Assembly (NCBI RefSeq): GCF_964204865.1
Contig: NC_135260.1
Span: 8,804,001-8,868,000, forward strand
Length of the DNA stretch: 64,000 nucleotides
Direction of reading: 5' to 3'
Source: Styela clava
Taxonomy: Eukaryota
Positions 16,034 through 57,529 of this stretch are shown one piece after another. The notes under the pieces are model-generated. The model ran no database searches. It was not told where the DNA came from and saw only the letters and a list, made by a program, of their open reading frames with translations. Both the position numbers and the translations under genes were made by a program. The first letter of the stretch is position 1; every line of letters begins with the position of its first letter.

Positions 16034-19000
16034 CTACCTCTTCCGAAGCACAAAAGATTCATGAACGACTAAATTTGGAGTTGATTGTAGTTCTTTGATT
16101 GACGTTACACCTATTAATAAAAATATTTAGTTCCTAGCTACAATGTGACATAATATATATATATTTTTCTAGCACGGACCAATACTATCGTTCCAATATG
16201 CTGCTTTCGCCAGCCCTCCGAATATTGGAAATTATCAGTCATTGTAATATATTTGCTACAAAACGTCTGATTTTATATTATACTTCTGTGTTTTGATATA
16301 GTAGGGAGTTGGGATATACATAGCCCTTAACCATTTTTAGGCCTAATCGTGATTTTATTGTTCTAAAAATGCCTCCAATTGCCCCACATTTGTCTCTATG
16401 TGATGTGGGAAAATGGTACACTACATACGGAGCAGGCAAGTGGTATATGACATTTTTGAGACACCTTGTTATTTCACAAGACTTCTTTACGGCATATAGC
16501 ATACAGCATATCCCACCTATTCTACTTACCTAGTTGTTGCATAGTTAAAGTAAATTCATCTCTTAAAATTTCTAACACTCGTTGAGCTCCTGTCTTTCCC
16601 TGTATGTAATATATAAAATAAAAGATCTTAACATGTAATTCAGAGAAGTGATTTTTTTTTAACTTTGATGATGTTTCCGGTGAATTGGTCATTGGTATTT
16701 AAAAACCTTTCATATAAGAATTTATTCTGAATTGATAGTGCCCGAATTTGTTTGGATAATTGAATTCGTTTCACGTAGATACGGTTTAATGCAAGGTCAT
16801 GGACATTATGTATAAACCTATGGAAGAGTCAGCAGCACCACTATGGGGCCAAACGGTCCATATAATTATGTTTCCTCAAGTGAGATATACTAAATATCGG
16901 ACCTGAGAAAAGTTGCGCACTATACTCAAATGTGAATTTTTGAAATTTCCAATTAGGGCAATTTTATGTTATATACCAGCCAGGACTTAATTTGTAAACC
17001 AATAAATATATGATATCATACATCACACGCTAGTCCCCAAAGTATTGGCCTTCCTACAAAAACAGCTTTAGCACCCAGAGCAATTGCTTTTGCGACGTCT
17101 GTTCCTTTACGAATCCCACCATCCAAGTAAACATCACATCTACCATTCACTGCTTTCACTACTTCTGGTAGCGAATCAATCTTAAATAGAGTTTAAAAGT
17201 ATTTGATTCATACACGACTAGGCTGGTGGTGATTCATCCTATGACTCGAATATATATATCAACCATACCGAACGACATATTCGAAGAAAAATCATTTTAC
17301 ACAAACTGACAAACTTTATCAAGTAATGCATGCTTACTGTAGAAAAAGTACCGTCAATCTGTCTTCCCCCGTGATTTGAAACAATTATCCCGTAGACGTT
17401 GTGTTTGATTGCTTCAAGGGCCATTTCTTCTGAAGATGGACGAATATTGATAACATGTTCATAAAAACAAAAACGTCTACCACCACTTTGAGGGTATACT
17501 ACATAATCAGTTGTACGATAAAAGTATGTATATACATAATATTTTCAATAAAAACAGTTCATTTGCCGCAGTGTAAGATGATGGTTAACCTGTTAGTATT
17601 CCCTTGACGACCACCGGTAACTTTGTAATGCTGCTCAGCCAGTCCAAGGAGTCCCATTGTGCACGACCATCGAAACAGTCATCCATTGTCAGAGAATTCT
17701 GCTTCCCGATTGCCTTCCATGATTTAGCCATGTTGATAGGTCTAAGAAAAATTAATCTTAATTATTGTAAACAAACGCTCGGATTGTGTTATAATCTGGG
17801 CATAATCCCAATCCCTCGAAGGTGCATATGGCTACTTTCGTCTCTGCCTAATTATCTTATCTATCTTAAAAGTCGGTAGATGGATTTTATTTTCAAGTAA
17901 TCTCCGAGTGCCACTGACCGATACTTCACCCCAAATCTTACTGTTTTTTATTATTCACGGTTCACCTTCGTTCGACATTCGGTAACAGATTTTACATGAC
18001 ATTCGGTGGAATTCTTTTAGCATTTGGTTTATTTTGCTGACATTGCTGTGGCCTCATTATTTATCTGATCTCCATGCCTATATATTTGATCATTGCCCTC
18101 TTGTTGTCCGAGATCAAATCGACTTATACCAGCGAAGATTACACTAACATAATTTACTTTCGATGTGTCGTGTCAGCATGTTTTCCGTCCGGTGTTCTGT
18201 ATATCCTTTTTCCAAGTACTGATTGATCAATTGTCACTACGAATCCTGTGAATCCACATTTCTCAGCTCGATTGACCAAATTTTCAACCATTTCACGGTG
18301 CTTAAGGAAGGAAATAAAGTTTGGAATAATAATAAATATATATATATGTTTTGTTTTACAAATCATGTCTACATTTAATTGTTGTCGCCGCTCAGCAACA
18401 GGAGCTCTATTTGTTTCCTTGTCTTCCTATAATGCAATAATTTTATAGTTATTTTGACATTAGTTGCCAACAACTATGATTCCGAGTACTCAAAAAGGTA
18501 ATACGGAACTCTGACATCGATAAGTCAGTTATATATCAGTTGGGTGCTCATGATTAGTACTCAAGTCATCTACAGGAATTCTTCTTCCTACAGTACTTAT
18601 TTTGTCACCATTGTTCTGCTGCCTGTCTTTGTGGTTGCATTATACTTAGCAGATAATCATAAATATACTCCAGTAATTGGTCTTAACGTATAAAATAAAA
18701 TTTCAAACTTTGAAAAATTGAAGGTGGCACCATCGCAAGCATCCTGGAATTTTCCTAGAAATCTCTTCGTACGTTTTGGTGCTCCCTGCACTCTGTACAT
18801 ATCCAGTGCGAACAGCTTCGGCAGCTGAAACGAAAAAGGTAGTTGAACAATCGTTTAAAAATACATCAGATAATACTATTGTGACCTGTTATCAGAAACG
18901 CTTATATTATTTGGAGGATAGGTTTGGCTACTCTGTGTATTTTTAATAACAAGCATATTTACACATATACCAAAATTTTTATTTCAGAGAGAAATCGGGT

Positions 19001-22000
19001 ATATATGCGGTTTACGTATCGTTAGGATAACATAGTTTAACATTTCTCCTATAAAATACTGTTGTATTCTGCTGAATTCATTCTCCTCCTCGCGTTACCT
19101 TGTGCTGTAGAAATTTCTGCGTCGGCTGTTGCTAAACAATGGAGAGCTGTTGGTGCAATACAAATAGGGAAAGAAATCTCTGATCCTAATACCGTTGTTG
19201 AAGTATCAACCTCTGAAACGTCTCGTAAAAGACGAGGTCGAAATTTCCACCTGAACACACGTATTTTATAATTGGTTGTCTCTATCTTCAAAATTTCATA
19301 CGACTATTTTTTTAAATGTTGTCAGAACGCCTGCTGTGCTGATAATTACCAACTTTCATTGACCGATGCTGCCATCAACGTTTTTACTAATCTTTGAGAG
19401 GACTCTTTCAGAGTTCGCGCAGTTGCTAATCGTCCCTGCTTTGAAAAGCTCGATGTGTGCAAATTTTGCTTTAACAGTCTTTACTTATCGATCTCAAGAT
19501 CGGTATGTATGTTGATAGGTATTTGTCTGTCTGTTAGATGCACGCAATATCTCACGAAGGCGAGGTTCAATCTGCTCCAAATTTTGCATGTGCATTCATC
19601 ATAGCTCGGATCAGAAGCCTATTGATTTTGGATGGATTATGATGGATTATATAATTAGCGAGTTATTAATTAATTAGTGATGGGACACACGGTGTTACTA
19701 TGGAGTAAGACCACTGTTTTGGGGGATCCCCTAACCTTCGATCGATAAGTCTTCGGTTTCCAACCGAATTCTAGTTTTAATATTATAACATGCCGATTGC
19801 ATCTGTACCACGGTCTGTTTGCAGGCTGGCTTGAGTACGGTAGTGGTGCACCGGTACCGCCAGGTGACCGGACGGACATCGTGTCAAATTTAGTCAGCAT
19901 CTACTTTACACTGACATATTACGGCAAACGTACTCTAAGTACAGTATTGGGACTCAATGAAGCAACTATCGCTCAGAAGGCTCAAATCATCTACCGCTCA
20001 ATCACCGCGTCCCAGTGATTTCCCTACACCCCCCCTAAAATTTCGAACCCCCCCCCCCCCTATTTTTGACTTTTCATTCCTTCAATACATCATCAACAAA
20101 AGTGAGTTCTTTTGGAAATCCCAAAATTTCAGTCAATTTCATAAACACATAACCAATCTCACCAATTTATTGCTTATTTTTGGACTCTCCAGAGTGACAT
20201 CTGAATATAAAACGATGCGCGCAGTAAAAGCGACTTGTCTAAGTTGTACTATGGGTTTGCTAATATCTGAATATAGGCGAAAAATGCTACTTTATTACCA
20301 ATAATATTCTTTAGGCGGTGATTCTAAAAATGTTCGCACTATGTTTGACAATACTTGAATTTCCGAACCAGATTAATTAGGTATACATGTTTTCAGACAC
20401 GGCCCCATTATACGAGACCTGCTAGACCTCGTAGATCTGCTAGGTGCGACGTTTTTCTGATCATTTGAATTAGATGATTTAATATTTGTCAGAAAAAAAA
20501 CTTTATCATGAATTTAGAATATTAAATTGATAAAGTCGTTGTGGAATTGCGTTTTCCAGATAGCGGAAGGACACTTTTTTCTTTTGCATCTTTAGAGCCC
20601 ATTAACTTGCACATTCATTTGCGGGGCTAATGCAGAGAGCGGCAAATGTATTTTGTATTCAGCGACTAAAAAATTCCCAAGCGGCACACGTTTTACAACC
20701 AAAATGCTTCGAAAAACGTTTGTCAAGTGTCCCACTGGTTGGGCACAGTCGAACAAATCCTAATGCACAATGGGGCGTTCTATTAAATAGAATGAAATAT
20801 GTCATTAAAAATTAGCAAAGAATCAGCATCTAAAGCAACTCTGGGCATCAAATTTGGATAGATTTGGCATTGTTTCCCACAGGCATCAAACTATTTCAGA
20901 CTACCTACCCCATGTCAAATTAGGAGAGGCTCATATACTCGCCAACGTTATGAATATTTTACAGTGGGCTGCAGCAAAGAAATACCAGACATTGGTTACT
21001 AGTTTTGTCTTTGAAACTATCAATCCATCAGTGTTGGGGACACATGATTAAGGAGTGATTAATATACTTAATGCTCATCTACCTATTACACGAAAATGCA
21101 GGGAGTCAGCTTGGGACTCGAGAATACAGCGAATCGACGCAATTTTTGAAATCCGTAATTGACTCGGAAGGCACTTGATTCACTAACTCGAGATTATAAA
21201 CTAGGGAAAAATTTACACTTAACTTAGACCAGTTTAATTTCAACAATAATTCTACCTATCGGCGTAATTACATTTTTTCAGTCTCCATATTATTGTCACT
21301 AAAATTTGTTGTTGTTTGTATACTTTATCCATCCTTTTGAAATTGGACCACCATTTTCGGGAGACACAAATACCACACGATTTATGAATTTACGATCTAA
21401 TACTGTATTAGTTACACAGGTTTCTGCAATTAGGCGACCCCAAGACATTGCAAAGTTGCAAAATCTTCACCACTCCCTAAATTTGAAAACACCCCCCCCC
21501 CCCCCTTAAAATGAAAAGCCGGGGAACATACTGCGGCGCGTCCTCTCAAAGCAGCGTAAAAATGCTACTGGCAGCAACCGTTGATTCGTATGAATGTTGG
21601 TAATGACGTTGTTGCATAGCACGTGTTTTTTATTAGGACTTGAGTGTTTCAAATTAATTTGCGATTTTTGTCTTGAGCCTAAATTATTTAGGTTTTCATG
21701 ATTTTCAAAGCCTTTTTTTTGCATCAGCGTATGTTTGAAACATAACGATTCAGCATCACAATTTTACAAATATCCATTAATTATTAACTCTGTCGTGCTA
21801 AAGTGAAAGAGAAATTTAATCTCGTTAAGATATTGTTTTTGTGCATAGGATCGCTGAATATACAGCAAAAAATTGTAAAACTCCACTAACTTTTTATATG
21901 CTTCACAATTTTCCATGACTGTTTCATGTCCTACTGCACCTCCATTATAAAATGCCAAATTCTCCGGAGGAATTTTTTGGGAAGCTAATTTTGCAAAGTC

Positions 22001-22027
22001 TTCGACGCATTTCAGTTGCTCATACAT
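16034..22027 (-). CDS. FMN-dependent alpha-hydroxy-acid oxidase (HAO-like) copy 1; exons 22027-21891, 19250-19099, 18824-18709, 18300-18158, 17741-17590, 17429-17338, 17180-17022, 16599-16530, 16110-16034
   Basis: [65 protein letters not shown]; in-frame GT-AG junctions; no internal stop seen. Confidence 0.92.
19347..21602. mobile_element. ~2.25 kb TIR element in HAO copy 1 intron 1
   Basis: Imperfect ~60-bp TIRs (TACCAACTTTCAT...CTTTGAGAGGAC vs GTCCTCTCAAAG...ATGAATGTTGGTA); empty site GATAATGACG in copies 2-4. Confidence 0.65.
19481..19776 (+). mobile_element. Helentron-associated (HINE/DINE-1-like) element, copy A
   Basis: Subterminal IR ACTTATCGATC/GATCGATAAGT, (GTCT)n tract, 3' hairpin CGGTTTCCAACCG, CTAGTTTT end. 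Confidence 0.7.
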
Positions 22028-34200: not shown

Positions 34201-35186
34201 CTCACTGAGCTCTGTATATATCCAGTGCAAACAGCCTCGGCAGCTGAAACGGAAAAAGCAGTTGAAACATTCGTCTAGAATACACTGGATTATATTATTG
34301 TGAGTGGTTATCGCTTATCGGGAAAGTTTATATTATTCAGAGGATAAATTTGGCTACTTTGTGAATTTTTAATAACAATCATATTTAGACATAAATACAT
34401 ATCAAAATTTTTATTTCAGAGAGAAATCGGGTATGCAGTTTACGTATCGTTAGGATAACATAGTGTGACATTTCTCATATAAAATACTGTTGCATTCTGT
34501 TGAATTTATTCTTCTGCTGCTGGCGTTACCTTGTGCTGTAGATATTTCTGCGTTGGGTGTTGCTAAATAATGAAAGGCAGTTGGTGCGATGCAAATAGGG
34601 AAAGGAATCTTTGATCCTAATACCATTGTTGAAGTATCAACTTCTGAAACGTCTTTCAAAAGACGAGGTCGAAATTTCCACCTGAACACACGCATTTTAT
34701 TATTGGGTATCTTATCTTCAAAATGTCGTATGGCTCTTTTATTTTCTGAAATGTTGACAGAACGCCAGCCGTGCTGATAATGACGTTGTTGTGTATGTTA
34801 AAATATGTTTTATTTATCATAGCATACCAATTATTTTATTAAGACTTGAGTGTCCAAAACTAATTTGACATTCTTGTCTTGAACCCAAATTATCAAGGTT
34901 TTCGTGATTTTTAAAGACTTTTTGTTTTTCATTCATAAATTATTATCTCTACCGTGCTAAAGTGATACAGAAATTTTCTTTCATTACGATATTATTTGGG
35001 TGCTTAGGACCGCTAAATGTACAGTAAAAAATTGTAACACTCTACTAACTTTTTATATGCTTCACAATTTTCTTTGACTGTCTCATGTCCTACTGCACCT
35101 CCGTTATAAAATGCCAAATTGTCGGGGGGAATTTTTTGGGAAGCTAAATTTTCAAAGTCTTCTATGCATTTCAATTGCTCATACAT
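31233..35186 (-). CDS. HAO-like copy 2; exons 35186-35050, 34681-34530, 34243-34128, 33562-33420, 32908-32757, 32628-32537, 32409-32251, 31838-31769, 31351-31233
   Basis: Exons 1-8 have the same sizes as copy 1 (137/152/116/143/152/92/159/70) with intact splice sites; TTG replaces the TAG stop, extending the C-terminus. Confidence 0.9.
33654..33944 (+). mobile_element. Helentron-associated element, copy B (HAO copy 2 intron 3)
   Basis: Close match to 19481-19776 at a non-orthologous site. Confidence 0.7.
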
Positions 35187-44408: not shown

Positions 44409-46804
44409 ATGAGATCATTTATAGCTTTGTTACTCATATGCGACATAAACGCTCAGAATATGAATAACTCTGTAGTTTTCAGTACAAAATGTGAAACTTG
44501 TGAGGTATCATGCAATACAGGGGAAGAGCCGGACTTATTCGTAAATAAGAGCGTTGAAATATGTTTGGGTCCAAATGGGAAAAGGGGTCGAGAGGGACCA
44601 ATTGGAGAAGCTGGTGAACCTGGGCCTCCTGGAGAATCGTGTGGCTGCGAGAAATACGATGAATTATGGACGAAAGCTCAATTTCTGAGAAAAATGTTGT
44701 TTGGTACGTTGTGAATATTTTTACTTCGTGTTACATAAAGTGTAAAATGTACATCAATTCTACAGCAACACGTCTAAAATACGTATTACATATATCTAAT
44801 TTATATTTTAGCGACGGATTCAGTATTTGAGTTATAATGAGAATATTATTGATATACATGTAAAGTACAATATCGTCTCGCTAATACCCGAATTGCGTAA
44901 GTCATTTTTGGCGATTTTGAGTTTTTTATAAAATAGGTATTTATGTAATGCTGCGCACCTGTCTGTTAACTCAGATTTTATTTTAGGAATTCCGAAACCC
45001 ATAAAAATGGAGATTTAGTATGACATGCACATTTGTGAAATTGTTTCGTCATAATGAATTATCCTTGTTACCGCAGTACTGTTGTGACGTCACAAAGGCA
45101 AAATACCCTCTGCGAAGTATTTTCGAGTTTTTCCATCTCGGATTCTAGCTTAGCGCGTATTAATTTGAATTTTTACTACAGTATAGGAAGACGTACACTT
45201 GTGATATTCACTGTCCGAGTCAAATTTACCTTGGTTGGCTTTTATATTGGGTGCATTGCTGTTTTATTCTTTATATTTAATCTTAGACCTATTTCGGTGG
45301 GTGTGCAGAACGTGTTATATTGAGGAAATATATATTTTTAAACATAAAAAATGATGTAATTGAAACTGATTAGCTATTTTGGGGATTAGACATTGTAGAT
45401 ACTGAGAATTACATTCGTTTTTGGAATGTTTAGTTTTCAGGACTGGTGCATATAGTGAAGTTGCAAAATTGCGTATGTCACCAAGTCAAAGACACATTTC
45501 TGCCTAAGTCACAGTGCGCCATTATGACGTCACTTAACTGCGTCATACAAATTAACTTAAATCCGGCTACGATCAAAAAATTGAACCATGGCAAATTATT
45601 GACTCTCAATTGCAACACAAAATCATTAGGAAGTTTTTTACGTTTTTCTCAAAACTGCTAAAAATGACTTACGCAATTCGGTTATTAGCGTGACGATATT
45701 GTAAAATATAATACTAAAATACTTGATTGAGAGCTCTTGTGCGGTCACTGTCAGTTTGTTCCTAGAATTTTTCATGCCAAGTTTTTCCAGGTACTTATAA
45801 ATAGTATATGAAATTTCTCACCATATTCCTGATGCTATTGGCACGAACTACTTCTAATTGTGTCACCATATCCACTATTGTGCTTCCTATAGTTGGCATG
45901 TTACCAGCGATAGTTCATGACTTCCTCTGGAGTGAATTTCTATTACACAGAATGACTGTATCGATAATTTTCATATAATTCTTAGTTCCAAACAAAGACA
46001 CTCAAAGTATCTCTGGAATAGAACTAATATAATGCAAGTCAAATGATTGGTGGAATAACTGTGTTGTCAATGTGAGCTAGAATCTTTGAGTGGAAGCCCC
46101 ATAGCCATCTTCGACTAGCAAGCAATAAATTGAGTAGTTTTTTACCGCAATAAATTTAGTAATTAGCGAGTAAGGTTGACGCAGTATAGACATTTTTCAG
46201 CATTTAAAGAAAACGCCAAGTTGGATTTTCTTGTCTGGAAAAAAGCAAGCAACGGTTTGTGGTATCGTTTATTTGAAGACACCGCTACTTGGACACAAGC
46301 AAAAGCAAATTGCGAAGCACAAAATGCAAGATTACCATCATCAGGAATGAGAACAAAATCAATTAGAAAGTAATTTAATACTGATATTGCATTTCTATTG
46401 GGCCTTTTCTAATATATATATATATTCCTTCTGTGTGGAATGCGAAGAATGTTGCCAAATTCTACTCGAAGAGCAGTTAAAATGGGTTTTATATAATATT
46501 ACAACTTTATGATTAGAATATTAACAAGTTGGGTGAGTGTGAATTTAATTTCAAAATATTTTCTAATCTTAGTGAATTTGATTTGATATCTAATTGCAGT
46601 ATGCAAACATACTACCTGCATTGTGCAATCGATTAGGACAGTGCCAGATACATGTCTCGTCATGTTGCCTTTCTAAGCATACCATATATACTAAACATCA
46701 TCCTCATAGTTCTTTGTTAATTCGTGGATTTTTTCTTCCAGAGAAGTTTTTGGTGGCATTCCAAACTCGATTGGTAATCTTTGGCTCGGATATAACGATA
46801 TTGC
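44409..46804 (+). pseudogene. Collectin-like gene copy A, truncated in the CTLD exon (exons 44409-44703, 46201-46369, 46742-46804)
   Basis: Matches copy B up to ...LWLGYNDIA, then joins LTR sequence; the rest of the exon does not resume on the other side of the element. Confidence 0.88.
44873..45696. mobile_element. TA-flanked TIR MITE in collectin A intron 1
   Basis: ~50-bp TIRs TCGTCTCGCTAATACCCGAATTGCGTAAGTCATTTTT / AAAAATGACTTACGCAATTCGGTTATTAGCGTGACGA; absent from copy B (~59983). Confidence 0.85.
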
Positions 46805-47220: not shown

Positions 47221-50200
47221 TCAAATGTAATCATCCAAATATCTTGGCCTTCGCCTAGTACGTTGGTTATTATCAGAGTTCGCATCAACTGTAACTTCTT
47301 CTGGTACAGTGTCTGGCCTTTTTTCAAATATATCATGAGCAATCTGCTCATCATTTTCCATAATAGGTTCCACATCAGGTAAAATGTCAAATCCGGTTAA
47401 GTCAATGTCGTTGTCTTCTTCATCTTCATGAAGGTAAGGTCTTAACTTGTCAACGTGTACAATTCGAGAACGTGTTCCCGAATTCTTCTGGATCCTATAC
47501 AAGTGATTAGGTAAACAGTCCACAATTCGATAAGGTCCAATCCAAGGAATACTCAGCTTGCGATGCTTTGGTGGATAATAATACCACACCAATTCATCTC
47601 TCTGGAAAGTAAGTGGTTTAACACCCAGATCAAAATTTCGCTTTTGTCTGGTTGCAGCAGCATTTAGATGTTGCCTAGCATGAAGAAAAGCTTTTTCAGT
47701 TGCACAGGAAAACCATTCGACAAACTCAGTGTAACAAGGATGAATAGATGACTCTGGTTTGCCAAACATAACATCAACAGGCATCTCGATTTCTCGTCCA
47801 AGCATTAACTTGTTCGGTGAATATCCTGTACTATCATGTACAGTGGAGCGATATGCCATGCAAAGATATGGGAGATGGTCGTCCCAATCATTTCGATTCT
47901 CATTTACAAAAGCTTTCAACATCTGCTGTATGGTCCTGTTGAAACGTTCAACTTGTCCATCTGAACGAGGATGATATGGAGTTGTTCGAGTCTTTTGAAT
48001 CCCGTACAATTGACACATTTCTGAAAATAATTTTGATTCAAAGTCTCTTCCTTGATCTGAGTGGAGAATTCTTGGTACCCCAAATCTCGAAAAGAATTGA
48101 GTAACCAATGCATCAGCAGTGGTGTCAGCTCGCTGATTTGGTAAAGCAAAACATTCCACCCATTTAGAGAAATAATCCGACAAAACCAAAATGTGTTCAT
48201 TTCCATTTTCAGTTACAGGCAATGGTCCAAGAAAATCAATGGTAATCCTTTCCATAGGAGCTCCAGATATAAGTTGTTTCAAATCTCCCTGTCTTCTTCC
48301 GTAAAGCATCTTTGTTGAAGCACAAGACTTGCAAAATTTGCACCATTTCAGAATGTCCCTTTTGAAACCAGGCCAATAAAATCTGCGCCTTATACTCTTG
48401 AAAGTTCGATTAGCACCAAGATGACCTGCAGTGCGCAAAGAATGTAGCTTATGGAACAAATCCTGCCTCAAATTTGATGGAACAATCAATTGGATATGCG
48501 ATTCCTCCGATTTACAATCAGGAATCCAACGACGATAGAGAAGTCCATTATCTACAAAAATCAAATCCCATTGTGACATCAAACGTTTGGTCACTGTTGA
48601 TTCAGGCATGTATTCTTGAATGTCAGGTTTCATAGCAGTAAGTTGTTTCCATTTCAAAACAGCAGAAATATCTGGATCTTCACTTTGCCAAGATTTAATT
48701 TGTTCATCTGTGTAGGTATCTAGCCAATTACAATCGGAACAGTCTGACGATGATTGACCGGGCCGTTTTGATATTGCACTTACAATAACATTGCTCACAG
48801 CCACATCACCATTGGTACCACAATCAGAACAATCTTCTCGTTTGCATTTGCGAACTTGGCGTGACAATCCATCAGCATTGCCATGTTTCACGCCCGGTCT
48901 GTGTTCAATCTTAAAGTCATAAGCACCAAGTGTTAATATCCATCTTGCTAACATTCCTTGAGGTTCACGAAAATTGATCAACCATTTCAGAGCAGCATGA
49001 TCTGTGCGAATTCTGAACGGTCTCCCGAGAAGAAAATGACTGAAGTGACGAACAGCCCACACCACAGCTAATAGTTCTCGGTGTGTAGCACAGTATCTAC
49101 GTTGAGACTTGGACATAGTCTTACTGGCATAAGAAAGTACACGTTCATTGTCGTCCTGAACTTGAGATAACACTGCACCAATCCCAAAACCACTGGCATC
49201 AGTATCCAATACAAATTCGCCGATTGTCCTCGGAAAGCTAAGAATTGGGGCAGATGTCAGACAATGCTTCAAAGTTTCAAAAGCCTTTTGACATTCAGTA
49301 CTCCATACAAAAGAAATATTCTTCCTGGTCAATCGAATAAGAGGTCCAGCAATTGTTGAATAATCTTGAACAAATTTCCGGTAGTAGTTCGCTGTGCCTA
49401 GAAAACTACGAATATCGCTGACAGAATTAGGCGTTTTCCATTCTTTGATAGCCGCAACATTTCCAGGGTCGCAACAGACACCTTCAGATGAAATAAGATA
49501 ACCAAGATAAGAGGTGCTTCGACGGAAAAGTTTACATTTCGAGGGCTTCAAGCGTAAACCGGCACGGCGAAGTCTTATAAAAACTTCCCGAAGATTTGAG
49601 AGTGCCATTGAGAAATCACTACCATGAGCCAAAACATCATCAAGAAAATTGAAACACCCGTTCCACAGAAGATCACCAAGGATATTGTCCATCATCCGTT
49701 CGAATGTTGCGGGAGCATTCGCCAAACCGAAAGGCATCACTACAAAGTGAAAATGACCACGGCCTGGGATGCTGAAGGCTGTCTTTTCACGGTCTGCAGG
49801 ATCAACCTCCACTTGCCAATATCCGCTAGCGAGATCAAGAGTTGAGAACCATTGTGCTCCGTTTAAGGACTCAATGATATCCTCAATACGCGGCAAGGGA
49901 TATGCGTCCTTGTATGTGACGTCATTAAGCAATCTAAAATCCACGCAAAATCTGGTAGAACCATCCTTTTTGGGAACTAGGACAATGGGAGAAGAATATG
50001 GGGAATCGCTGGGTTCTTTGACACCCTGAGCCAGCATATTATCAACAGCTTCTTCGGCTATCTTCCTACGCGCCCACCCCATTCGACGAGGAGCCTGCCG
50101 AATCGGCTGTGGTGTGGTTGTGATGATCCTATGCTTTGCTGCTGAAGTACGGCCTAGTTCACCATCTGGCCCTACAAATACATCATGAAATTCACAAATC

Positions 50201-51072
50201 AAATTGACCAACTGTTCACGTTGACTCGGGGTTAGATCCTCAACGGAATTGACCATGTCATGTAGATGTTCTGGTAATTCAGAAGCTATAACCCGATTAT
50301 CGAATTCGTCAACTTGAATTTGTGCTACAAGTTGAGGATGTGCAATACCAAGCAAAGATCCAGCCCTGATCTTAAGTTGTCTGCCTTTTTGGTTCACCGC
50401 TAGAACAGGAACAGTGGACTTTCCTGGATCCACAACAGAAGAGATCAGCTGAATGCCATCAGCGAGGAAAGAAGAATTCAGCGGTTCAACAAGAGCAGCA
50501 ACGTCAGACAAACTGCTTTTCGGCCAAGGACGACTAAGTTGTGCAGGGATAACAACCTTAGAATATGGCGGTATCGTAATATCTTCTCGAACAGTTACAC
50601 GACAACACGGTACAGACTTTTCAGTAAACAGTTTGATTTCATGACCCTCTATCATCATGTGTCCAGATGATAAGTAAAGAACGCAATCATGTTCTCGGAG
50701 ATAGTCCATGCCCAAAATACCATTAGACATACCTAGGTTGGCAACAACAACAGTGCGTCGCGATGCAAAAGAATCAATAGACAAATCAACTTCCAAAGTA
50801 CCCAGTGGTAATAAATCATGTCCTCCCACTGCAACAAGAGATTCTTCGAGCGGTGCTAAATGTGCTTCTTTCCCACCTATAGCCTCAAAGATGGAAATGT
50901 CGATCAGAGTAGTCATAGCACCACTATCTACAAGAAAATTGAACGGTTGATTGTTTACAAGTACCTTCGCATGCCAACTATTGTCATATTGCAAAGAACA
51001 AATATTCAGGTCTATATTCTGGTTCGTTGGTCCGTCATCAAGTAATAATTCAGCGGACACTGAGGACCTCAA
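47221..51072 (-). CDS. pol: Gypsy Pol (protease, RT, RNase H, integrase), probably expressed by -1 frameshift from gag
   Basis: LVDSGA; RFCVDFRLLN, MPFGLANAPATF, FLDD; LDTDAS; HHCC zinc finger; SDQG, GQVERFNRT. Confidence 0.96.
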   Translation of the reverse strand: MRSSVSAELLLDDGPTNQNIDLNICSLQYDNSWHAKVLVNNQPFNFLVDSGAMTTLIDISIFEAIGGKEAHLAPLEESLVAVGGHDLLPLGTLEVDLSIDSFASRRTVVVANLGMSNGILGMDYLREHDCVLYLSSGHMMIEGHEIKLFTEKSVPCCRVTVREDITIPPYSKVVIPAQLSRPWPKSSLSDVAALVEPLNSSFLADGIQLISSVVDPGKSTVPVLAVNQKGRQLKIRAGSLLGIAHPQLVAQIQVDEFDNRVIASELPEHLHDMVNSVEDLTPSQREQLVNLICEFHDVFVGPDGELGRTSAAKHRIITTTPQPIRQAPRRMGWARRKIAEEAVDNMLAQGVKEPSDSPYSSPIVLVPKKDGSTRFCVDFRLLNDVTYKDAYPLPRIEDIIESLNGAQWFSTLDLASGYWQVEVDPADREKTAFSIPGRGHFHFVVMPFGLANAPATFERMMDNILGDLLWNGCFNFLDDVLAHGSDFSMALSNLREVFIRLRRAGLRLKPSKCKLFRRSTSYLGYLISSEGVCCDPGNVAAIKEWKTPNSVSDIRSFLGTANYYRKFVQDYSTIAGPLIRLTRKNISFVWSTECQKAFETLKHCLTSAPILSFPRTIGEFVLDTDASGFGIGAVLSQVQDDNERVLSYASKTMSKSQRRYCATHRELLAVVWAVRHFSHFLLGRPFRIRTDHAALKWLINFREPQGMLARWILTLGAYDFKIEHRPGVKHGNADGLSRQVRKCKREDCSDCGTNGDVAVSNVIVSAISKRPGQSSSDCSDCNWLDTYTDEQIKSWQSEDPDISAVLKWKQLTAMKPDIQEYMPESTVTKRLMSQWDLIFVDNGLLYRRWIPDCKSEESHIQLIVPSNLRQDLFHKLHSLRTAGHLGANRTFKSIRRRFYWPGFKRDILKWCKFCKSCASTKMLYGRRQGDLKQLISGAPMERITIDFLGPLPVTENGNEHILVLSDYFSKWVECFALPNQRADTTADALVTQFFSRFGVPRILHSDQGRDFESKLFSEMCQLYGIQKTRTTPYHPRSDGQVERFNRTIQQMLKAFVNENRNDWDDHLPYLCMAYRSTVHDSTGYSPNKLMLGREIEMPVDVMFGKPESSIHPCYTEFVEWFSCATEKAFLHARQHLNAAATRQKRNFDLGVKPLTFQRDELVWYYYPPKHRKLSIPWIGPYRIVDCLPNHLYRIQKNSGTRSRIVHVDKLRPYLHEDEEDNDIDLTGFDILPDVEPIMENDEQIAHDIFEKRPDTVPEEVTVDANSDNNQRTRRRPRYLDDYI

Positions 51073-51096
51073 GCCCGCTGAGTGTCGTTTAAATTT
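51048..51096 (-). promoter_or_regulatory. -1 programmed ribosomal frameshift signal
   Basis: A AAU UUA AAC in the gag frame, a 5-nt spacer, then stem UCAGCGGGC...GUCCGCUGA; pol is in the -1 frame. Confidence 0.8.
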
Positions 51097-52646
51097 GCGG
51101 TCGAAGAGGAAGCAGCTGTTGCAGGATCAGCGAGATTCTGAAGATGTGGACAATCCCGTTTAAGATGACCAGTCTGCTTGCAATTAAAACATGCCTTGCA
51201 ATCCCTGCCCCAATGACCATGTTTACCACATCGAGGACACGGGTTGCGTGGTACACCATCAAAATTGCGATTGTTGGCACGCGGCTTAACATATCCTATA
51301 ATCTCATCCAGTTTCTGTACAAGTAACTTGATACTGTCTTCAAGAGAAAAGTCGCTTTGCTGATTAACTACATTACCAGTATTGCTCTGTTTCACTGCTG
51401 CAATGCGCGGTTTAGACATGTTCTTTCCCTCGGAGTGGTTATTATCAACAGAGTAATACAGTGTCGCAAGAGACAAAGCCTTTTCGAAAGTATCAGGCTG
51501 TTGCATGGTAACATGCTTGATCATGCTTTCATCGGTTAGACCGGCAAGAAATTGCGATTTCAAAATATCATCTTGACCAGTAATATCCAGATTTGGGTAG
51601 GCAAGAATAACAAGCTCTTTCAACTTATTACCGTAATCCCGTGGCGCTTCATTTGGCTTAATCCTACGACAGTGAAATGTAGTACGGTAGGAGCTCTCAT
51701 TTCCGGCAGGTTTGAAGAAATGATTGAAATGAGCCACAATATCACGATAGCTAGTACGTTTCATATCTGGTAAATCTTTCAACACATTTAGAGCTTGACC
51801 TGTCATGCAAGTAGCCAATTCTAATCCCGCAGTGTCGTCATCCCACTGATTATAACTGGTAACCAATTCAAAATGGCATAAATAACTGGGCCACGTCATG
51901 ACAGTGGATCCATCGAAATACATTGGCTTTTTGGCATTTCTTGCCATCATCGTAGCATTAGCTGTGCTATTGAGAACACTATGACTAACATTGGCATTTG
52001 AGACACTACTAGCGCTCACTGGAGGAGCTGATTGTGTAGCCACTGTAACCATTTTCGGCCTAGTACTAAGTTGCCTTCTGACATTTGTGCCCTCATTACC
52101 ATTATCATTCAAAAAAGGAATTGTAGGTGCAAGGTTACTCACATGACCATTCTCCAAAAATTTCACTTCTAATGTCTGTGAGAACGCGTTCCGCTTCCCT
52201 TCTGGCTGTCCATCTTCTGATCCAAAATCAGAAATTTCATCATGCTTGAGAACAGGTGCTGCTTTTGGAACAACTGTTGCTGGTGTTGAAGTGATCAGGC
52301 TGACATTTGGGTCATGTGACATGGGCTGGGTTTCCTCAGGATCAGCAATTTTTCCTTTATTAACCACGCCAGAAATATCTTGCAGAATGCTGTACATCTG
52401 CTCAAATGACGAGCCCATTTTTGTATTTTGGAATTCAACTGATTCTAGTTGACTTCCAATCTGTTGTACACAACCGTCCATCTGTTGCATGCGACTGTCT
52501 ATCAGTTGCAAACGGCTGTCAGTCTCCTCTTGCTTTTCCTCTGACTCCCTCAATTTTGCCTTCAATACCTGTATTTGCAGATGCAAAAGTTCATTCTCCT
52601 CTTTGGCTTGCTTTGGTGCCGGTACAATCTTTCTTCTCTTAACCAT
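51069..52646 (-). CDS. gag: Gypsy Gag with coiled-coil N-terminus and two CCHC zinc knuckles
   Basis: CPRCGKHGHWGRDC and CFNCKQTGHLKRDC; 525-aa ORF directly upstream of pol. Confidence 0.93.
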   Translation of the reverse strand: MVKRRKIVPAPKQAKEENELLHLQIQVLKAKLRESEEKQEETDSRLQLIDSRMQQMDGCVQQIGSQLESVEFQNTKMGSSFEQMYSILQDISGVVNKGKIADPEETQPMSHDPNVSLITSTPATVVPKAAPVLKHDEISDFGSEDGQPEGKRNAFSQTLEVKFLENGHVSNLAPTIPFLNDNGNEGTNVRRQLSTRPKMVTVATQSAPPVSASSVSNANVSHSVLNSTANATMMARNAKKPMYFDGSTVMTWPSYLCHFELVTSYNQWDDDTAGLELATCMTGQALNVLKDLPDMKRTSYRDIVAHFNHFFKPAGNESSYRTTFHCRRIKPNEAPRDYGNKLKELVILAYPNLDITGQDDILKSQFLAGLTDESMIKHVTMQQPDTFEKALSLATLYYSVDNNHSEGKNMSKPRIAAVKQSNTGNVVNQQSDFSLEDSIKLLVQKLDEIIGYVKPRANNRNFDGVPRNPCPRCGKHGHWGRDCKACFNCKQTGHLKRDCPHLQNLADPATAASSSTANLNDTQRA

Positions 52647-52783: not shown

Positions 52784-52802
52784 TCCTGGCGTGTGCTCGC
52801 CA
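52784..52802 (-). promoter_or_regulatory. Candidate primer-binding site (tRNA-Arg-like)
   Basis: TGGCGAGCACACGCCAGGA resembles the complement of a tRNA-Arg(ACG) 3' end (recalled, not aligned). Confidence 0.5.
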
Positions 52803-53328: not shown

Positions 53329-53572
53329 TGGAGAAATAGTAAACCTGCACTACTAATATCATTTTACAACAAGAATTACATAGATTTACGGCATTAAAAC
53401 ACTATAATAATAACCTAATATACAGAGGAATATCTACACTGCCGGCAGTCTGACAAACCAGCTACAAGAGAAAGTTACACAGTTGTTCACTAGTGACTCA
53501 AGTGGTAAGAATAAATATGGGCGTACAGAATAAAACAGAGAATAAAACAGAGTTATAGACGTGGTCGTCTCA
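53329..53572 (-). repeat. 5' LTR (shared part; true LTR may extend to ~52815)
   Basis: Direct repeat of 46805-47048. Confidence 0.9.
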
Positions 53573-54724: not shown

Positions 54725-57529
54725 ATCACACGCTAGTCCCCAAATTATTGGCCTTCCTACAAAAACAGCTTTAGCACCCAAAGCAATTGCTTTTGCGACG
54801 TCTGTTCCTTTACGAATTCCACCATCCAAGTAAACATCACATCTACCATTCACTGCTTTCACTACTTCTGGTAGCGAATCAATCTAAAACAGAGTTTAAA
54901 ACGATATAATCCATACACGACTAGGCTGGTGGGAATGCATACTATGACTCAAATATATATATCAACCATAACGGGAACGACACATTCGAGGAAAAACTGA
55001 TTTTTCACAAACTGAGAAAATTTATCAAGTAATGCATACTTACTGTTGAAAAAGTACTGTCTATCTGCCTTCCTCCGTGATTTGAAACAATTATTCCATG
55101 AACGTTGTGTTTGAGTGCTTCAAGGGCCATTTCCTCTGAAGATCGACGAAGATTCATAATATGTTCATGAAAAAGAACAAGAACCTCCGCCCAACACGTA
55201 ACCAGTTTTACGATAGAAGTATGTATACAATATTTTTAATAAAAAACGTTCATTGGTCGCTGTGAAATATGGTGGCTAACCTGTTAATATTCCTTTGACG
55301 ACCACCGGTAACTTTGTAATGCTCTTTAGCCAGTCCAAGGAATCCCATCGCGCACTACCATTTAAACACTCATCCATTATCAGAGGTTCCTGCCTTCCGA
55401 TTGCTTTCCATGATTCAGTCAAGTTTATAAGTCTGAGAGCAATTAATTTTAGTTTTTTATAAACAAACGCTCAGGTTGTATTATTGCTGTTGTTCCCCCC
55501 AAAAGAGAAGAATCTGAGCGTAATCCCGATCCTTCAAGGGCAGTAATGACTACTTTTCAACATTTTTTTGAACATTTCACTTGACATTTGGTATAATTCA
55601 TTTAATATTCGGCTTCAATTTTGTTGACATTGCTATGGCTCTACTATTCATTTGATCTTCGTGCCTATATATTTGATCATTGCCTTCTTGTTTTCCGAGT
55701 CCGAGATCGGCTCGACTTGTAACAGCGGAAATTACACTAACCCAATTTCGTGTACATGTGACGTGTCAGCATGTTTTCCGTCAGGTGTTCTGTTTATCCT
55801 CTTTCCAAGTACTGGTTGATCAATTGTTACTACGAATCCTGTGAATCCACATTTCTCAGCTCGTTTGACCAAGTGTTCGACCATTTCACGGTGCTTAAAC
55901 AAAATAATGGCATAAAAAATATTACTCATCTTTTTGTCTTTATATTAAATATAGTAGTTATAAAATTAAGAAATCTCAAATTAAGAAAGAAAATAAAGTT
56001 TTGAAGAATTTTAATTATTATATACAGTATAATATAGCCTATATGTTTTGTTTTATCATGTCTACATATGAATTGTTGTCACCACTCAGCAACCGATGCT
56101 CTTTTTGGTTCCTTGTCTACCTACAATGCAATAATTTTATAGTTATTTTGACATTGATTATTTGCCAACATCTATGATTCAGAGTAACCCAGAGTTTACA
56201 TAACTCAAAAAGGTAATACGAAACTCTGACATCGAAGTATCAGCTGGGTGCTTCTGACTGGTACTCGAGTCAGCTACCGAAACTATTCTTCTCATACCAT
56301 TCTTGACACCATTGTTCTGCTTCCAGTCTTTGTGATTGCATTATACTCAATAGCCTATATTTCCAAAATTGGCCAAAGCGTATGAAATAAAATTACAAAC
56401 CTTGAGAAATTGAAGATGGCACCATCGCAAACATCCCGGAACTTTCGTAGAAATCTCTTCATACGTCCTAGTGCTCACTAAGCTCTGTACATATCCAGTG
56501 CGAACAGCTTCGGCAGCTGGAACGGAAAAAGTATTTAAAAACGGAAAAGTAGTAAAATTCATCAGATTATGTTACTTTGAGCGGTTATCGGGAAAGCTTA
56601 TGTTATTTAGAGGACAAGTTTTGCTACTTTGTGTTTTTTTCATTAACTACATAACATTACATAATATGTAAATATACTAGTGATATATAAAATTTTTATA
56701 TATATCAAAGTTTTTTTTTTCAGAGATAAATCAGGTATGTGGTTTTAAATATCGTTAGGATAGCATAGTTTGACGTTTCTCCTATAAAATACTGCAGCAT
56801 TCTGCTGGCGCTACCTGGCCTTCCTGGCGCTACCTTGTGCTGTAGAAATTTCTGCGTCGGCTGTTGCTAAACAATGGAAGGCTGTTGGTGCAATGCAAAT
56901 AGGGAAAGGAATCTTTGATCCTAATACCGTCGTTGAAGTATCAACTTCTGAGACGTCACGCAAAAGACGGGGTCGAAATTTCCACCTGAACACACGTATT
57001 TTACTATTGGTTTTCTTATCCTCAAAATGTCGTATGACTCTTATTTTAAATAAAAAAATGTTGTGGGAACGCCTGCCGTGTTGATAATGACGTTATTGAT
57101 TTGCTCGTTGGTATCATTTTTTTATCAAAGCAAATTATTTCATCAGGACTTGAGTGTTCTAAATTAATTCGAGATTCTTGTCGTGAGCCTAAATTATTTA
57201 GGTTTTCATGATTTCAGAGACCTATTTTTTGTATCAGCGTATTTTCCAATTTAACGATTCAGCATCATATTTTCCGAATATTCATAAATTATTATGTCCA
57301 TCGTGCTAAAGTGAAATTTTCTTAGTTACAATATTATTTTTGTGCATAGGGCCGCTAAATATACAGGAAAAAAATTGTAAAACTTTACTAACTTTTTATA
57401 TGCTTTACAATTTTCTTTGACTGTTTCATGTCCTACTGCACCTCCATTATAAAATGCCAAATTTTCGGGGGGAATTTTTTGGGAAGCTAACTTTGCAAAG
57501 TCTTCTACGCATTTTAATTGCTCATACAT
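54725..57529 (-). pseudogene. HAO-like copy 4, exons 1-7 only (3'-truncated by the duplication breakpoint at ~54410)
   Basis: Near-identical to copy 3; identity stops inside intron 7; no exon 8 or 9 sequence follows. Confidence 0.85.

What the first reader, a model, noticed from the sequence alone, without database searches (positions are those of the whole stretch)
16034..57529. Tandem array of alpha-hydroxy-acid-oxidase paralogues with a rewired substrate pocket
Seen: every copy keeps the FMN and catalytic scaffold (VTID Asp, GKR Arg, VKG Lys, SNHGGRQ His/Arg, DGGIR, GRP). Against recalled human HAO1, WLQLY becomes WCHLQ (Gln130->His, Tyr132->Gln), Tyr26 becomes Phe, and Trp110 becomes Gly (copy 1) or Val (copies 2-4). 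Known: in glycolate oxidase, lactate oxidase and flavocytochrome b2 this Tyr binds the substrate 2-OH and is highly conserved; Tyr26 and Trp110 shape the carboxylate and side-chain pocket. The same substitutions in three intact diverged copies argue against decay. Inference: an amplified flavoenzyme subfamily acting on a different, bulkier or non-2-hydroxy-acid substrate.
Basis: partly seen in the sequence, partly recalled or inferred. Interest (0 to 1): 0.8.

Follow-up and report, generated by a model that had tools for sequence, protein, structure and literature searches.

The report
Tyrosine-less hydroxyacid oxidase gene array
A sea squirt (Styela clava) carries a tandem row of glycolate-oxidase-like flavoenzyme genes that are expressed and kept by selection although a normally conserved catalytic tyrosine is replaced by glutamine, so they probably do a different job from ordinary glycolate oxidase.

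Summary
The window is Styela clava DNA. It carries four minus-strand HAO/glycolate-oxidase-like genes with canonical splice sites. Copies 1-3 are intact with nine exons. Copy 4 is a 98.5% identical recent duplicate that lacks exons 8-9.

All four copies keep Asp160, Arg167, Lys236, His260, Arg263 and the FMN motifs. All read W-C-H-L-Q where HAO1 has W-L-Q-L-Y (Tyr132 to Gln), Phe at 26, and Gly or Val at 110.

Evidence against decay:
- Spliced contigs from four RNA-type runs (three studies) confirm every intron of copy 2.
- dN/dS among copies 1-3 is 0.19-0.27.

The array is part of something larger. In this genome, 20 of 24 exon-3-like places carry W-C-[HQ]-x-Q. These proteins form one well-supported clade, sister to the canonical intronless Styela HAO genes. 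Protein searches found the clade in no other species.

The window genes are its most derived branch: Phe26, a small residue at 110, and no peroxisomal signal.

RefSeq already annotates them as "hydroxyacid oxidase 1-like". I found no paper on them.

The retained carboxylate and base residues point to a 2-hydroxy-acid substrate, not a non-hydroxy-acid one. Substrate and chemistry remain untested.

The parts
16034..22027 (-). Copy 1, intact 9-exon HAO-like gene (RefSeq XP_039273041.2, 365 aa). Exons (high..low): 22027-21891, 19250-19099, 18824-18709, 18300-18158, 17741-17590, 17429-17338, 17180-17022, 16599-16530, 16110-16034 (includes the stop).
   Evidence: Exon mapping and AG/GT sites. The protein matches P0342 exon by exon. 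C-terminus ...FVLRKR*.
31233..35186 (-). Copy 2, intact 9-exon gene and transcribed. Exons: 35186-35050, 34681-34530, 34243-34128, 33562-33420, 32908-32757, 32628-32537, 32409-32251, 31838-31769, 31351-31233 (includes the stop). It has a 14-residue C-terminal extension compared with copies 1 and 3.
   Evidence: All eight introns are seen as CT..AC joints (GT..AG on the minus strand) in contigs of 2 to 4 of the 4 runs laid. Translations.
37432..42410 (-). Copy 3, intact 9-exon gene. Exons: 42410-42274, 41866-41715, 41398-41283, 40775-40624, 40320-40169, 40023-39932, 39771-39613, 39202-39133, 37508-37432 (includes the stop). Exon 4 is 9 nt longer than in copies 1 and 2 because the donor site is shifted.
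   Evidence: Pfam FMN_dh matches exon by exon.
54725..57529 (-). Copy 4, exons 1-7 only (57529-57393, 56985-56834, 56516-56401, 55893-55742, 55432-55281, 55135-55044, 54883-54725). No exon 8 or 9 is present. The frame stops one codon into intron 7. RefSeq models it as a 321-aa protein (XP_077974151.1).
   Evidence: Exon 8 was found 3 times, none in copy 4. No exon 9 near it. Stop. P0344 mapping.
18718..18732 (-). Codons for W128-C129-H130-L131-Q132 in copy 1. The same five codons lie at 34137-34151 (copy 2), 41292-41306 (copy 3) and 56410-56424 (copy 4). Gln132 is CAA in all four.
18784..18786 (-). Codon 110. It is Gly in copy 1 and Val in copies 2-4 (34203-34205, 41358-41360, 56476-56478). 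Codon 26 is Phe in all four copies (21950-21952, 35109-35111, 42333-42335, 57452-57454).
39298..44871 (.). Recent segmental duplication. This stretch is 98.5% identical over 5584 aligned positions to 54410-59984. Its lower boundary lies inside intron 7, which is why copy 4 lacks exons 8-9.
   Evidence: Exon 7/8 coordinates.
47221..52646 (-). Gypsy-type LTR retrotransposon coding region between copies 3 and 4, next to the duplication junction. It has two long open frames of 525 and 1283 aa. It is not part of the enzyme genes.
Evidence: ORFs. Zinc knuckle, protease, RT, RNase H and integrase domains.

Best explanation
The four genes belong to a clade of FMN-dependent 2-hydroxy-acid oxidase-like enzymes that, as far as the databases show, is specific to Styela clava. 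The clade arose from the tunicate HAO gene and was then amplified to about 20 genes in several tandem arrays.

Shown:
- The clade fixed Tyr132 to Gln (with Cys129, and His or Gln at 130) before it expanded.
- It kept every other catalytic and FMN-binding residue.
- Members in this window are intact, spliced, transcribed (copy 2) and under purifying selection.
- Canonical HAO genes with WFQLY and a PTS1-type end exist elsewhere in the genome as intronless genes.

Inferred:
- The proteins still bind FMN and still oxidise an L-2-hydroxy acid. Arg167 and Arg256 (=263) hold the carboxylate, His253 (=260) takes the hydroxyl proton, and a hydride goes to flavin N5.
- The Gln132 amide takes over, less effectively or differently, the hydrogen bond that the Tyr hydroxyl normally gives to the substrate 2-OH or product keto group.
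- The window array is the most derived branch. It has Phe26, Gly/Val110 and Phe/Leu134 in place of the Trp110-Tyr134-Tyr208 gating network, and -RKR/-RNK in place of -SKL. So it most likely acts outside peroxisomes, on a larger or more hydrophobic 2-hydroxy acid than glycolate.
- Copy 4 is a truncated by-product of a recent duplication.
For: Family and fold:
- PF01070 matches 6 of 8 exons of copy 3, in collinear profile order.
- P0159 hits human HAO1 at E = 1.3e-91.
- The model has pTM 0.80, with best folds glycolate oxidase and HAO1 at TM 0.81-0.87.

Residues:
- Position 132 is Q in 12 of 12 Styela WC[HQ]xQ proteins, while D160, R167 and K236 are kept in all 12. H260 and R263 are kept in the 11 full-length ones and are deleted in the shortened isoform P0158.
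- In an unbiased scan, only 7 positions conserved at 85% or more in 161 other HAO-family proteins are lost in the clade. Tyr132 (93% in the others, Gln in 11 of 11) is the only active-site one among them.

Selection: dN/dS is 0.23, 0.19 and 0.27 for copy pairs 1-2, 1-3 and 2-3.

Expression: all 8 introns of copy 2 appear as joints in contigs of 4 runs from 3 studies.

Clade:
- 11 of 11 rows form one clade (SH-aLRT 100). It is sister (99) to the canonical Styela HAO rows. The window pair sits on the first, long branch.
- 20 of 24 exon-3-like places in the genome carry the motif.
- In the profile search the top 12 hits are all Styela clava (553-717 bits), followed by a drop to 501 bits for a canonical protein.

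C-termini: -RKR, -RNK and an extension in the window, against -AKL, -SKL, -LKL and -SKF in 8 of the 9 other aligned clade proteins. The ninth, P0157, ends -ISP.

Precedent that the Tyr is dispensable for turnover: Hmo Y128F stays active (PMC6677016 passages).
Against: - No activity, cofactor or localisation datum exists for any clade member.
- Transcription was shown only for copy 2. It rests on runs whose RNA nature is a guess by the tool, though spliced contigs are hard to get from DNA.
- The contigs differ from the window by up to about 5% per exon, so they are alleles from other animals.
- The AlphaFold model has low confidence exactly at 162-167 and 254-262, the loops that carry Arg167 and His253/Arg256. 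It cannot say how Gln132 sits.
- 11 of the 20 clade genes keep Trp110, and most aligned members keep Tyr26. The clade as a whole need not have a bulky substrate, so Tyr132 to Gln could be a nearly neutral change in an ordinary short-chain hydroxy-acid oxidase.
- 'Styela-specific' rests on protein databases that hold few other stolidobranch proteomes. The exon-fragment search was blank and had no positive control.
Confidence: 0.7

Rival explanations
1. These are ordinary short-chain hydroxy-acid (glycolate/lactate) oxidases. The Tyr-to-Gln change is a tolerated, nearly neutral substitution, and the copies are simply dosage duplicates.
For: All other catalytic residues are invariant. Gln can donate a hydrogen bond as Tyr does. 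11 of 20 clade genes keep Trp110. Tyr-to-Phe mutants of related enzymes keep activity (PMC6677016 passages).
Against: The genome has at least five separate full-length canonical HAO open frames. Three of these were read. Two have WFQLY and all three have PTS1-type ends. The window copies have also lost Tyr26, Trp110, Tyr134, Tyr208 and the PTS1. Position 110 varies across the clade (W, Y, F, L, V, G) while the catalytic core is fixed, which looks like diversification of specificity. Tyr132 is present in 145 of the 165 proteins where the motif could be read.
Confidence: 0.15
2. The chemistry has changed. Without the Tyr hydroxyl, the clade carries out a lactate-monooxygenase-like four-electron oxidative decarboxylation (2-hydroxy acid to the acid one carbon shorter) and releases little H2O2. 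That would make cytosolic, PTS1-less copies tolerable.
For: In Hmo the single change Y128F turns the oxidase into an LMO-like oxidative decarboxylase, with H2O2 inversely related to product (PMC6677016 passages). The window proteins lack a PTS1.
Against: This is pure analogy. Gln is not Phe and can still hydrogen-bond. Natural lactate monooxygenases keep the Tyr (recalled, not tested here). 8 of the 9 other aligned clade proteins keep a PTS1-type end, as expected for H2O2 producers.
Confidence: 0.1
3. These are decaying or non-catalytic duplicates (pseudoenzymes) left over from tandem amplification.
For: Copy 4 is truncated after exon 7. A conserved catalytic residue is missing. A retrotransposon and recent duplications show that the region is unstable.
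Against: Copies 1-3 have open frames through nine exons with AG/GT at every junction. dN/dS is 0.19-0.27. Copy 2 is spliced as modelled. About 95 columns are invariant across 11 clade proteins that share as little as 53% identity with the first row, and these include every FMN and catalytic motif.
Confidence: 0.05

Closest known systems
Human/vertebrate HAO1 (glycolate oxidase; PDB 2RDU, 6GMB)
   Same: Same Pfam family and the same (beta/alpha)8 fold (TM 0.81-0.84, 39-42% identity; E = 1.3e-91). Residue numbering is identical up to 167. Asp160, Arg167, Lys236, His260, Arg263 and the FMN-phosphate motifs are kept.
   Different: Tyr132 is Gln, Leu129 is Cys, Gln130 is His, Tyr26 is Phe, Trp110 is Gly/Val, Tyr134 is Phe/Leu, and the Tyr208 and Leu205 positions are not conserved. 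There is no -SKI/-SKL type end. It is not an orthologue on the tree.
Canonical Styela clava HAO genes (P0163, P0164; intronless open frames on C18, C9 and C16)
   Same: Sister group on the tree (SH-aLRT 99). About 50% identity.
   Different: The canonical genes read WFQLY (one reads WFQLH), keep Trp110, end in -SRL/-AQL, and have no intron where the clade has one after exon 3.
HAO2 / long-chain hydroxy-acid oxidase (rat LCHAO, PDB 3SGZ, 1TB3)
   Same: Phe at 26, a non-Trp residue at 110 and a different gating loop, all features tied to larger substrates (PMC9114433 passage). Fold TM is about 0.81.
   Different: HAO2 keeps Tyr132 and a PTS1. The Styela clade does not group with HAO2.
p-Hydroxymandelate oxidase Y128F mutant (PDB 5ZZX, 6A0V and others)
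   Same: An enzyme of the same family without the hydroxyl of the equivalent Tyr. It has Phe at the position of Tyr26 (Phe24). It is still active and is a structural match at TM about 0.77.
   Different: It is a laboratory mutant of a bacterial enzyme, 32-33% identical, with Phe rather than Gln. That Hmo Tyr128 equals HAO1 Tyr132 follows from the family-wide 'Tyr/His dyad' statement in the paper. I did not make a residue-level alignment.

Membership tests
FMN-dependent alpha-hydroxy-acid oxidase/dehydrogenase family (Pfam PF01070, FMN_dh) | Profile match along the whole domain | tested here: met
   Exons 2, 4, 5, 6, 7 and 8 of copy 3 match PF01070 at profile positions 33-82, 122-159, 195-228, 232-259, 260-311 and 313-335 (E from 4e-23 to 0.0056). 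Exons 1 and 3 alone give no match at E <= 0.01. The RefSeq proteins carry PF01070.
FMN-dependent alpha-hydroxy-acid oxidase/dehydrogenase family (Pfam PF01070, FMN_dh) | (beta/alpha)8 barrel like glycolate oxidase | tested here: met
   AlphaFold2 model of P0159: pLDDT 75, pTM 0.80. Best PDB folds are glycolate oxidase 5ZBM at TM 0.87 and HAO1 at 0.81-0.84.
FMN-dependent alpha-hydroxy-acid oxidase/dehydrogenase family (Pfam PF01070, FMN_dh) | Catalytic base His260 with Asp160; Lys236 at the flavin | tested here: met
   SNHGGRQ, VVTID and VVVKG are present in 4 of 4 copies. The positions are invariant in 11 of 11 aligned clade proteins. Residue roles come from PMC9114433 passages.
FMN-dependent alpha-hydroxy-acid oxidase/dehydrogenase family (Pfam PF01070, FMN_dh) | Carboxylate-binding Arg167 and Arg263 | tested here: met
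   LGKR and GGRQ are present in 4 of 4 copies. R167 and R256 are invariant in the clade.
FMN-dependent alpha-hydroxy-acid oxidase/dehydrogenase family (Pfam PF01070, FMN_dh) | Active-site Tyr (HAO1 Tyr132 = GOX Tyr129 = Hmo Tyr128) paired with the His | tested here: not met
   Gln in 4 of 4 copies and in 12 of 12 clade proteins. Tyr is found in 93% of 161 other family members.
FMN-dependent alpha-hydroxy-acid oxidase/dehydrogenase family (Pfam PF01070, FMN_dh) | Binds FMN and oxidises an L-2-hydroxy acid | not testable with these tools
   The DGGIRKGTD and GRP motifs are present. Their role in phosphate binding is recalled.
Glycolate oxidase proper (HAO1 orthologue) | Trp110 and the Trp110-Tyr134-Leu191-Tyr208 gating network | tested here: not met
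   Position 110 is Gly/Val, 134 is Phe/Leu, and 208 is Thr/Ile in P0159/P0160. The feature definition comes from PMC9114433 passages.
Glycolate oxidase proper (HAO1 orthologue) | Tyr26 on the substrate carboxylate | tested here: not met
   Phe in 4 of 4 copies.
Glycolate oxidase proper (HAO1 orthologue) | C-terminal PTS1 tripeptide | tested here: not met
   The ends are -RKR (copy 1), -RNK (copy 3) and -FWN after an extension (copy 2). The PTS1 consensus itself is recalled.
Glycolate oxidase proper (HAO1 orthologue) | Groups with HAO1 on a tree | tested here: not met
   It is a separate clade inside the tunicate sequences, sister to the canonical Styela genes (quick search, SH-aLRT only).
HAO2 / long-chain hydroxy-acid oxidase | Groups with HAO2; keeps Tyr132 | tested here: not met
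   The HAO2 rows form their own clade elsewhere on the tree, and all keep Tyr at 132.

The most novel reading that the evidence does not exclude
The Styela W-C-[HQ]-x-Q clade is a natural 'tyrosine-less' branch of the alpha-hydroxy-acid oxidases whose chemistry has shifted, not only its substrate. One possibility is lactate-monooxygenase-like oxidative decarboxylation with little free H2O2. About 20 paralogues would then have diversified at position 110 and in the gating loop into a battery of enzymes for different 2-hydroxy acids. The window array would be the cytosolic members of that battery, taking bulky substrates.
Probability: 0.12. Interest if true: 0.75.

Novelty: new variant of a known kind. 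Interest (0 to 1): 0.5.

Why it matters
The Tyr/His pair is treated as a hallmark of this flavoenzyme family, and its role has been argued over for decades using laboratory mutants. Here nature has made the experiment. A clade of about 20 genes replaced the Tyr by Gln, kept everything else, stayed under selection and diversified its pocket.

Comparing these proteins with the canonical Styela HAO genes in the same genome would give a direct, natural test of what the Tyr contributes: rate, product release, or control of the oxidation level. It could also uncover new 2-hydroxy-acid metabolism in tunicates.

The find is still modest. The genes are already annotated as HAO1-like, the fold and family are ordinary, and other invertebrate paralogues have also lost this Tyr.

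Tried and rejected
- **Exon 3 alone against PDB sequences.** 0 matches even at E <= 10. Exons 1 and 3 alone gave no Pfam match. The residue mapping for 110 and 132 therefore rests on full-length RefSeq proteins of the same genes, not on the exon by itself.
- **Representative search with exon 2.** 1255 proteins at E <= 0.001. Of the best 150, only P0002 showed a WC..Q motif. Most of the best hits were short fragments.
- **Exon-3 open-frame profile A2 against the 5.8-billion set.** This aimed to catch exon-sized fragments from unannotated genomes. 842 candidates were found and none scored E <= 0.001. The genome's own fragments did not appear either, so the blank says nothing about other species.
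- **Paper searches with no hit.** 'Styela clava' + 'hydroxyacid oxidase'; 'hydroxyacid oxidase' + 'ascidian'; 'Y129F' + 'glycolate oxidase'.
- **The Styela clava genome paper PMC7540406.** I used find mode only. It has 0 occurrences of hydroxyacid, glycolate, peroxisom, oxidase or glyoxylate. Its list of 78 expanded families is in Table S8, a supplement I could not open, and that table may name this family.
- **Rfam and tRNA scans of the very deeply covered stretch in intron 3 of copy 2.** Nothing was found. It is an interspersed repeat.
- **The structure model.** It could not be used to place Gln132 against FMN. No coordinates or cofactor are available, and confidence is low at the catalytic loops.
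- **The search of earlier findings by words.** No result.
- **Rejected: copy 1 or 2 broken by an in-frame TAA at the end of exon 4.** The upstream GTAAAT donor removes the stop. The contigs use that donor in copy 2 (joint 32908 to 33420), and RefSeq does the same in copy 1.

Full report
**What is in the window**

Six-frame reading and a self-comparison show four homologous multi-exon genes on the minus strand. I defined the exons of copy 3 by eye from the three-frame translation, fixed their ends, and mapped them onto the other copies.
- Exons 1-7 occur four times each. Exon 8 occurs three times, and exon 9 three times.
- Every junction listed has AG/GT.
- Copies 1 and 2 use a donor 9 nt upstream of the one in copies 3 and 4 at the end of exon 4. 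With the copy 3 donor they would contain an in-frame TAA.
- Copies 3 and 4 sit in a duplication that is 98.5% identical over 5584 aligned positions (39298-44871 against 54410-59984).
- The lower edge of that duplication falls inside intron 7, so copy 4 has no exon 8 or 9. Its frame ends one codon after exon 7.
- A Gypsy-type element with two long open frames lies between copies 3 and 4.

**Whose genes they are**

I searched exon by exon and left the joined (spliced) step out throughout.
- Exon 2 of copy 3, searched against 1.84 billion representatives, gave 1255 proteins at E <= 0.001. Among the best 150, one full-length protein carried the same odd motif: P0002, from Styela clava.
- A word search with P0002 returned twelve further Styela clava 'hydroxyacid oxidase 1-like' proteins ahead of everything else.
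- P0342 (XP_039273041.2, 365 aa) matches copy 1, including Gly110.
- P0344 (XP_077974151.1, 321 aa) is copy 4, ending after exon 7.
- P0343 (XP_077974148.1, 772 aa) is a read-through model of copy 3 plus copy 2.

The window is therefore Styela clava, and RefSeq already annotates the genes.

**Check of the observation**

All four copies keep [35 protein letters not shown] and VGRPI. In all four, residue 26 is Phe and residues 128-132 read WCHLQ. Residue 110 is Gly in copy 1 and Val in copies 2-4.

The equivalence with HAO1 numbering was tested three ways:
- Exon 1 aligns without gaps to human HAO1 residues 3-44, though the E-value is weak at about 1. The best hit there is a flavocytochrome b2 chain that itself reads AFY at this place. 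I recall that chain as the Y143F mutant.
- In an alignment of 128 full-length proteins with a primate HAO1 as ruler, the twelve Styela proteins have Q at 132, C at 129 and H or Q at 130. D160, R167 and K236 are kept in all twelve; H260 and R263 are kept in all but the shortened isoform P0158, where they are deleted.
- HMMER aligns rWCHLQ of P0159 with rWFQIY of L-lactate oxidase.

Exon 3 alone finds nothing in PDB or Pfam, so it is a divergent stretch.

**Not decay**

Pairwise dN/dS was computed by Nei-Gojobori, with counts summed exon by exon and split codons left out:

| Pair | dN/dS | Note |
|---|---|---|
| Copies 1-2 | 0.23 | dS 0.22-0.27 across these three pairs |
| Copies 1-3 | 0.19 | |
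| Copies 2-3 | 0.27 | |
| Copies 3-4 | 0.38 | only about 8 differences; uninformative |

Contigs of four runs from three studies were laid on 31100-37099. They show joints with CT..AC ends at every predicted intron of copy 2:
- Introns 8, 6, 5 and 4 appear in 4 of 4 runs.
- Introns 7, 3 and 2 appear in 3 of 4 runs.
- Intron 1 appears in 2 of 4 runs.
- The exon 3|4 junction and the short exon 4 are among those confirmed.

Caveats:
- The tool only guesses that these runs are RNA.
- They are contigs, so they show presence and not level.
- They differ from the window by up to about 5% per exon, which fits alleles from other animals. The genome paper gives 1.72% heterozygosity.

**The wider picture in this genome**

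PF01070 searched over the whole assembly gives 79 exon-level matches. Five of these are full-length matches without stops in single open frames (C18 three times, C16, C9).

Searching with the exon-3 peptide finds 24 places. Read in frame:
- 20 of the 24 carry W-C-[HQ]-x-Q followed by a GT donor.
  - Four are in the window and one is 9 kb beyond it.
  - Two more are on C14, nine on C4, two on C10, one on C13 and one on C16.
- The other four read WFQLY (three) or WFQLH (one) and run on without an intron.
- Position 110 in the 20 genes is W in 11, V in 3, Y in 2, F in 2, L in 1 and G in 1.

Three of the canonical intronless genes were read, and they end in -SRL, -SRL and -AQL.

**Phylogeny and spread**

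I built a quick IQ-TREE tree of 52 rows, with SH-aLRT support only.
- The 11 clade proteins form one group (support 100, stem length 0.44).
- That group is sister (99) to the canonical Styela genes plus one unnamed Logan transcript.
- Both lie inside a tunicate group that includes Ciona and Phallusia.
- The window proteins (P0159/P0160) form the first and longest branch inside the clade (0.42).
- Rows left out: I chose 49 of the 333 stored proteins by hand to represent taxa, plus three open frames from loci.

A profile of the 11 clade proteins, searched against 5.8 billion proteins, lists 12 Styela clava proteins first (553-717 bits). The score then drops to 501 bits for a canonical Styela protein. 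No other species appears in between.

Among the 184 proteins from the two full-length searches, the motif could be read in 165:
- 145 have Tyr at the fifth place.
- 12 are the Styela clade.
- 8 others lack Tyr: two WMQIQ, WLQML and WMQIT in an unnamed ENA group that sits next to Phallusia; WFQLN, WFQLI and WFQIH in the brittle star Amphiura; and WFQLS in one rodent HAO2.

Loss of this Tyr has therefore happened several times in invertebrate paralogues. Only Styela shows a large expansion after it.

**What exactly is rewired**

I ran an unbiased scan for positions conserved at 85% or more in 161 other family members but nearly absent in the clade. It found seven: 132 (Y to Q, 11 of 11), 177, 178, 221, 243 (D to M, 11 of 11), 287 (E to D, 11 of 11) and 349. 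Only 132 is an active-site residue as listed in PMC9114433 (passages).

That paper names:
- Tyr26, Trp110, Tyr132, Arg167 and Arg263 as lining the pocket.
- Asp160, Lys236 and His260 as the turnover residues.
- Trp110, Tyr134, Leu191 and Tyr208 as the gating network.
- Trp110 plus the gating loop as what separates HAO1 from HAO2.

The window proteins have changed Tyr26, Trp110, Tyr132 and Tyr134, and the Tyr208 position is not conserved. Their C-termini read -RKR, -RNK or run on. 8 of the 9 other aligned clade proteins end in -AKL, -SKL, -LKL or -SKF; the ninth, P0157, ends -ISP.

**How it most likely works**

Shown: the family, the fold, the retained residues, selection and transcription.

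Inferred: the proteins bind FMN and oxidise an L-2-hydroxy acid by the usual route, with Gln132 taking the place of the Tyr hydroxyl.

PMC6677016 (passages) gives the precedent:
- The equivalent Tyr128 of Hmo sits 2.5 Å from the substrate 2-OH and is 'highly conserved'.
- Y128F stays active and becomes an oxidative decarboxylase that releases little H2O2.
- Hmo has Phe at the Tyr26 position.

This shows that the Tyr is not needed for turnover and that its absence can change the outcome of the reaction. It does not show what Gln does.

The model of P0159 (pLDDT 75, pTM 0.80) matches glycolate oxidase and HAO1 at TM 0.81-0.87. It is unreliable at the catalytic loops and carries no cofactor.

**Comparison and novelty**

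The genes are members of the FMN_dh family by homology. They are not glycolate oxidase orthologues and not HAO2.

The genes are annotated, but I found no paper on them. Three searches returned nothing, and the genome paper's main text does not mention the family.

I rate this a new variant of a known kind, with interest about 0.5. It is a real, sizeable and testable natural experiment on a hallmark residue. It sits in an ordinary fold, has no functional data, and has smaller parallels elsewhere.

The scan had two earlier notes nearby. s1-816077 describes the neighbouring paralogue. s1-812156 describes the Gypsy element at the duplication junction. Both agree with what I saw.

Noticed in passing
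window 47221-52646 (-), element noted by another reader as 46790-54420: A Gypsy-type LTR retrotransposon with two long open frames. The 525-aa frame has a zinc knuckle. The 1283-aa frame has protease, RT, RNase H and integrase domains. It lies between copies 3 and 4, at the edge of the duplication that truncates copy 4.
   Followed up: partly
window 39298-44871 and 54410-59984; also 46013-46811 and 60347-61125: A recent segmental duplication (98.5% over 5584 aligned positions; the second pair is 91.7% over about 800 bases). It copies HAO exons 1-7 together with the upstream plus-strand gene.
   Followed up: partly
window 44409-46373 (+), duplicate near 59.5-61.1 kb: A plus-strand gene with a signal-like start and a short collagen repeat (Pfam Collagen, E = 6e-4, below the cut-off). 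A later exon looks like a C-type lectin by eye only; Pfam found nothing in that exon. It may be one of the collectin/MBL genes that the genome paper reports as expanded.
   Followed up: partly
window about 33650-33900 (intron 3 of copy 2): An interspersed repeat of about 250 bases. There were 3449 first-look candidates in the genome, of which 40 were scored. 45 matches were listed, one being the query itself, and the other 44 are 86-94% identical, including a tandem run on C8. Contig depth in all four runs is in the thousands. No Rfam or tRNA match.
   Followed up: partly
G000 C18:3990590-3991627, C18:4007191-4008216, C18:4022499-4023500, C16:13391291-13392310, C9:16383710-16384711: The canonical HAO genes of this genome are intronless single open frames, while the derived Tyr-less clade keeps introns. 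Three were read: two have WFQLY, and they end in -SRL, -SRL and -AQL. The C16 gene reads WFQLH, with His at 132. His is the one-step codon intermediate between Tyr (TAY) and Gln (CAA).
   Followed up: partly
window 31233-42410; RefSeq XP_077974148.1 (P0343): A 772-aa RefSeq model joins copy 3 to copy 2 as one read-through protein. I did not test whether such a transcript exists.
   Followed up: no
proteins P0167, P0273 (WMQIQ), P0271 (WLQML), P0280 (WMQIT); P0170, P0172, P0303 (Amphiura): Independent losses of the same Tyr. One is in an unnamed group from ENA assemblies, with several genes on the same 127-kb contig, that sits beside Phallusia on the tree. The other is in brittle-star paralogues.
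   Followed up: partly
window 34243 to 35050 and 32908 to 33295: Minor alternative joints in copy 2 contigs, each seen in one run at low depth. One skips exon 2. The other uses another acceptor inside intron 4.
   Followed up: no
window 31233-31277: Copy 2 has lost the stop codon used by copies 1 and 3. It runs on for 14 more residues (…[17 protein letters not shown]).
   Followed up: yes
G000 C14:8876785-8879647 (+), 9 kb beyond the window: A fifth, plus-strand paralogue (WCHIQ, Phe110, corresponding to P0156 with Phe26 and -AKL). It belongs to another branch of the clade, so the local cluster mixes old and young copies.
   Followed up: partly
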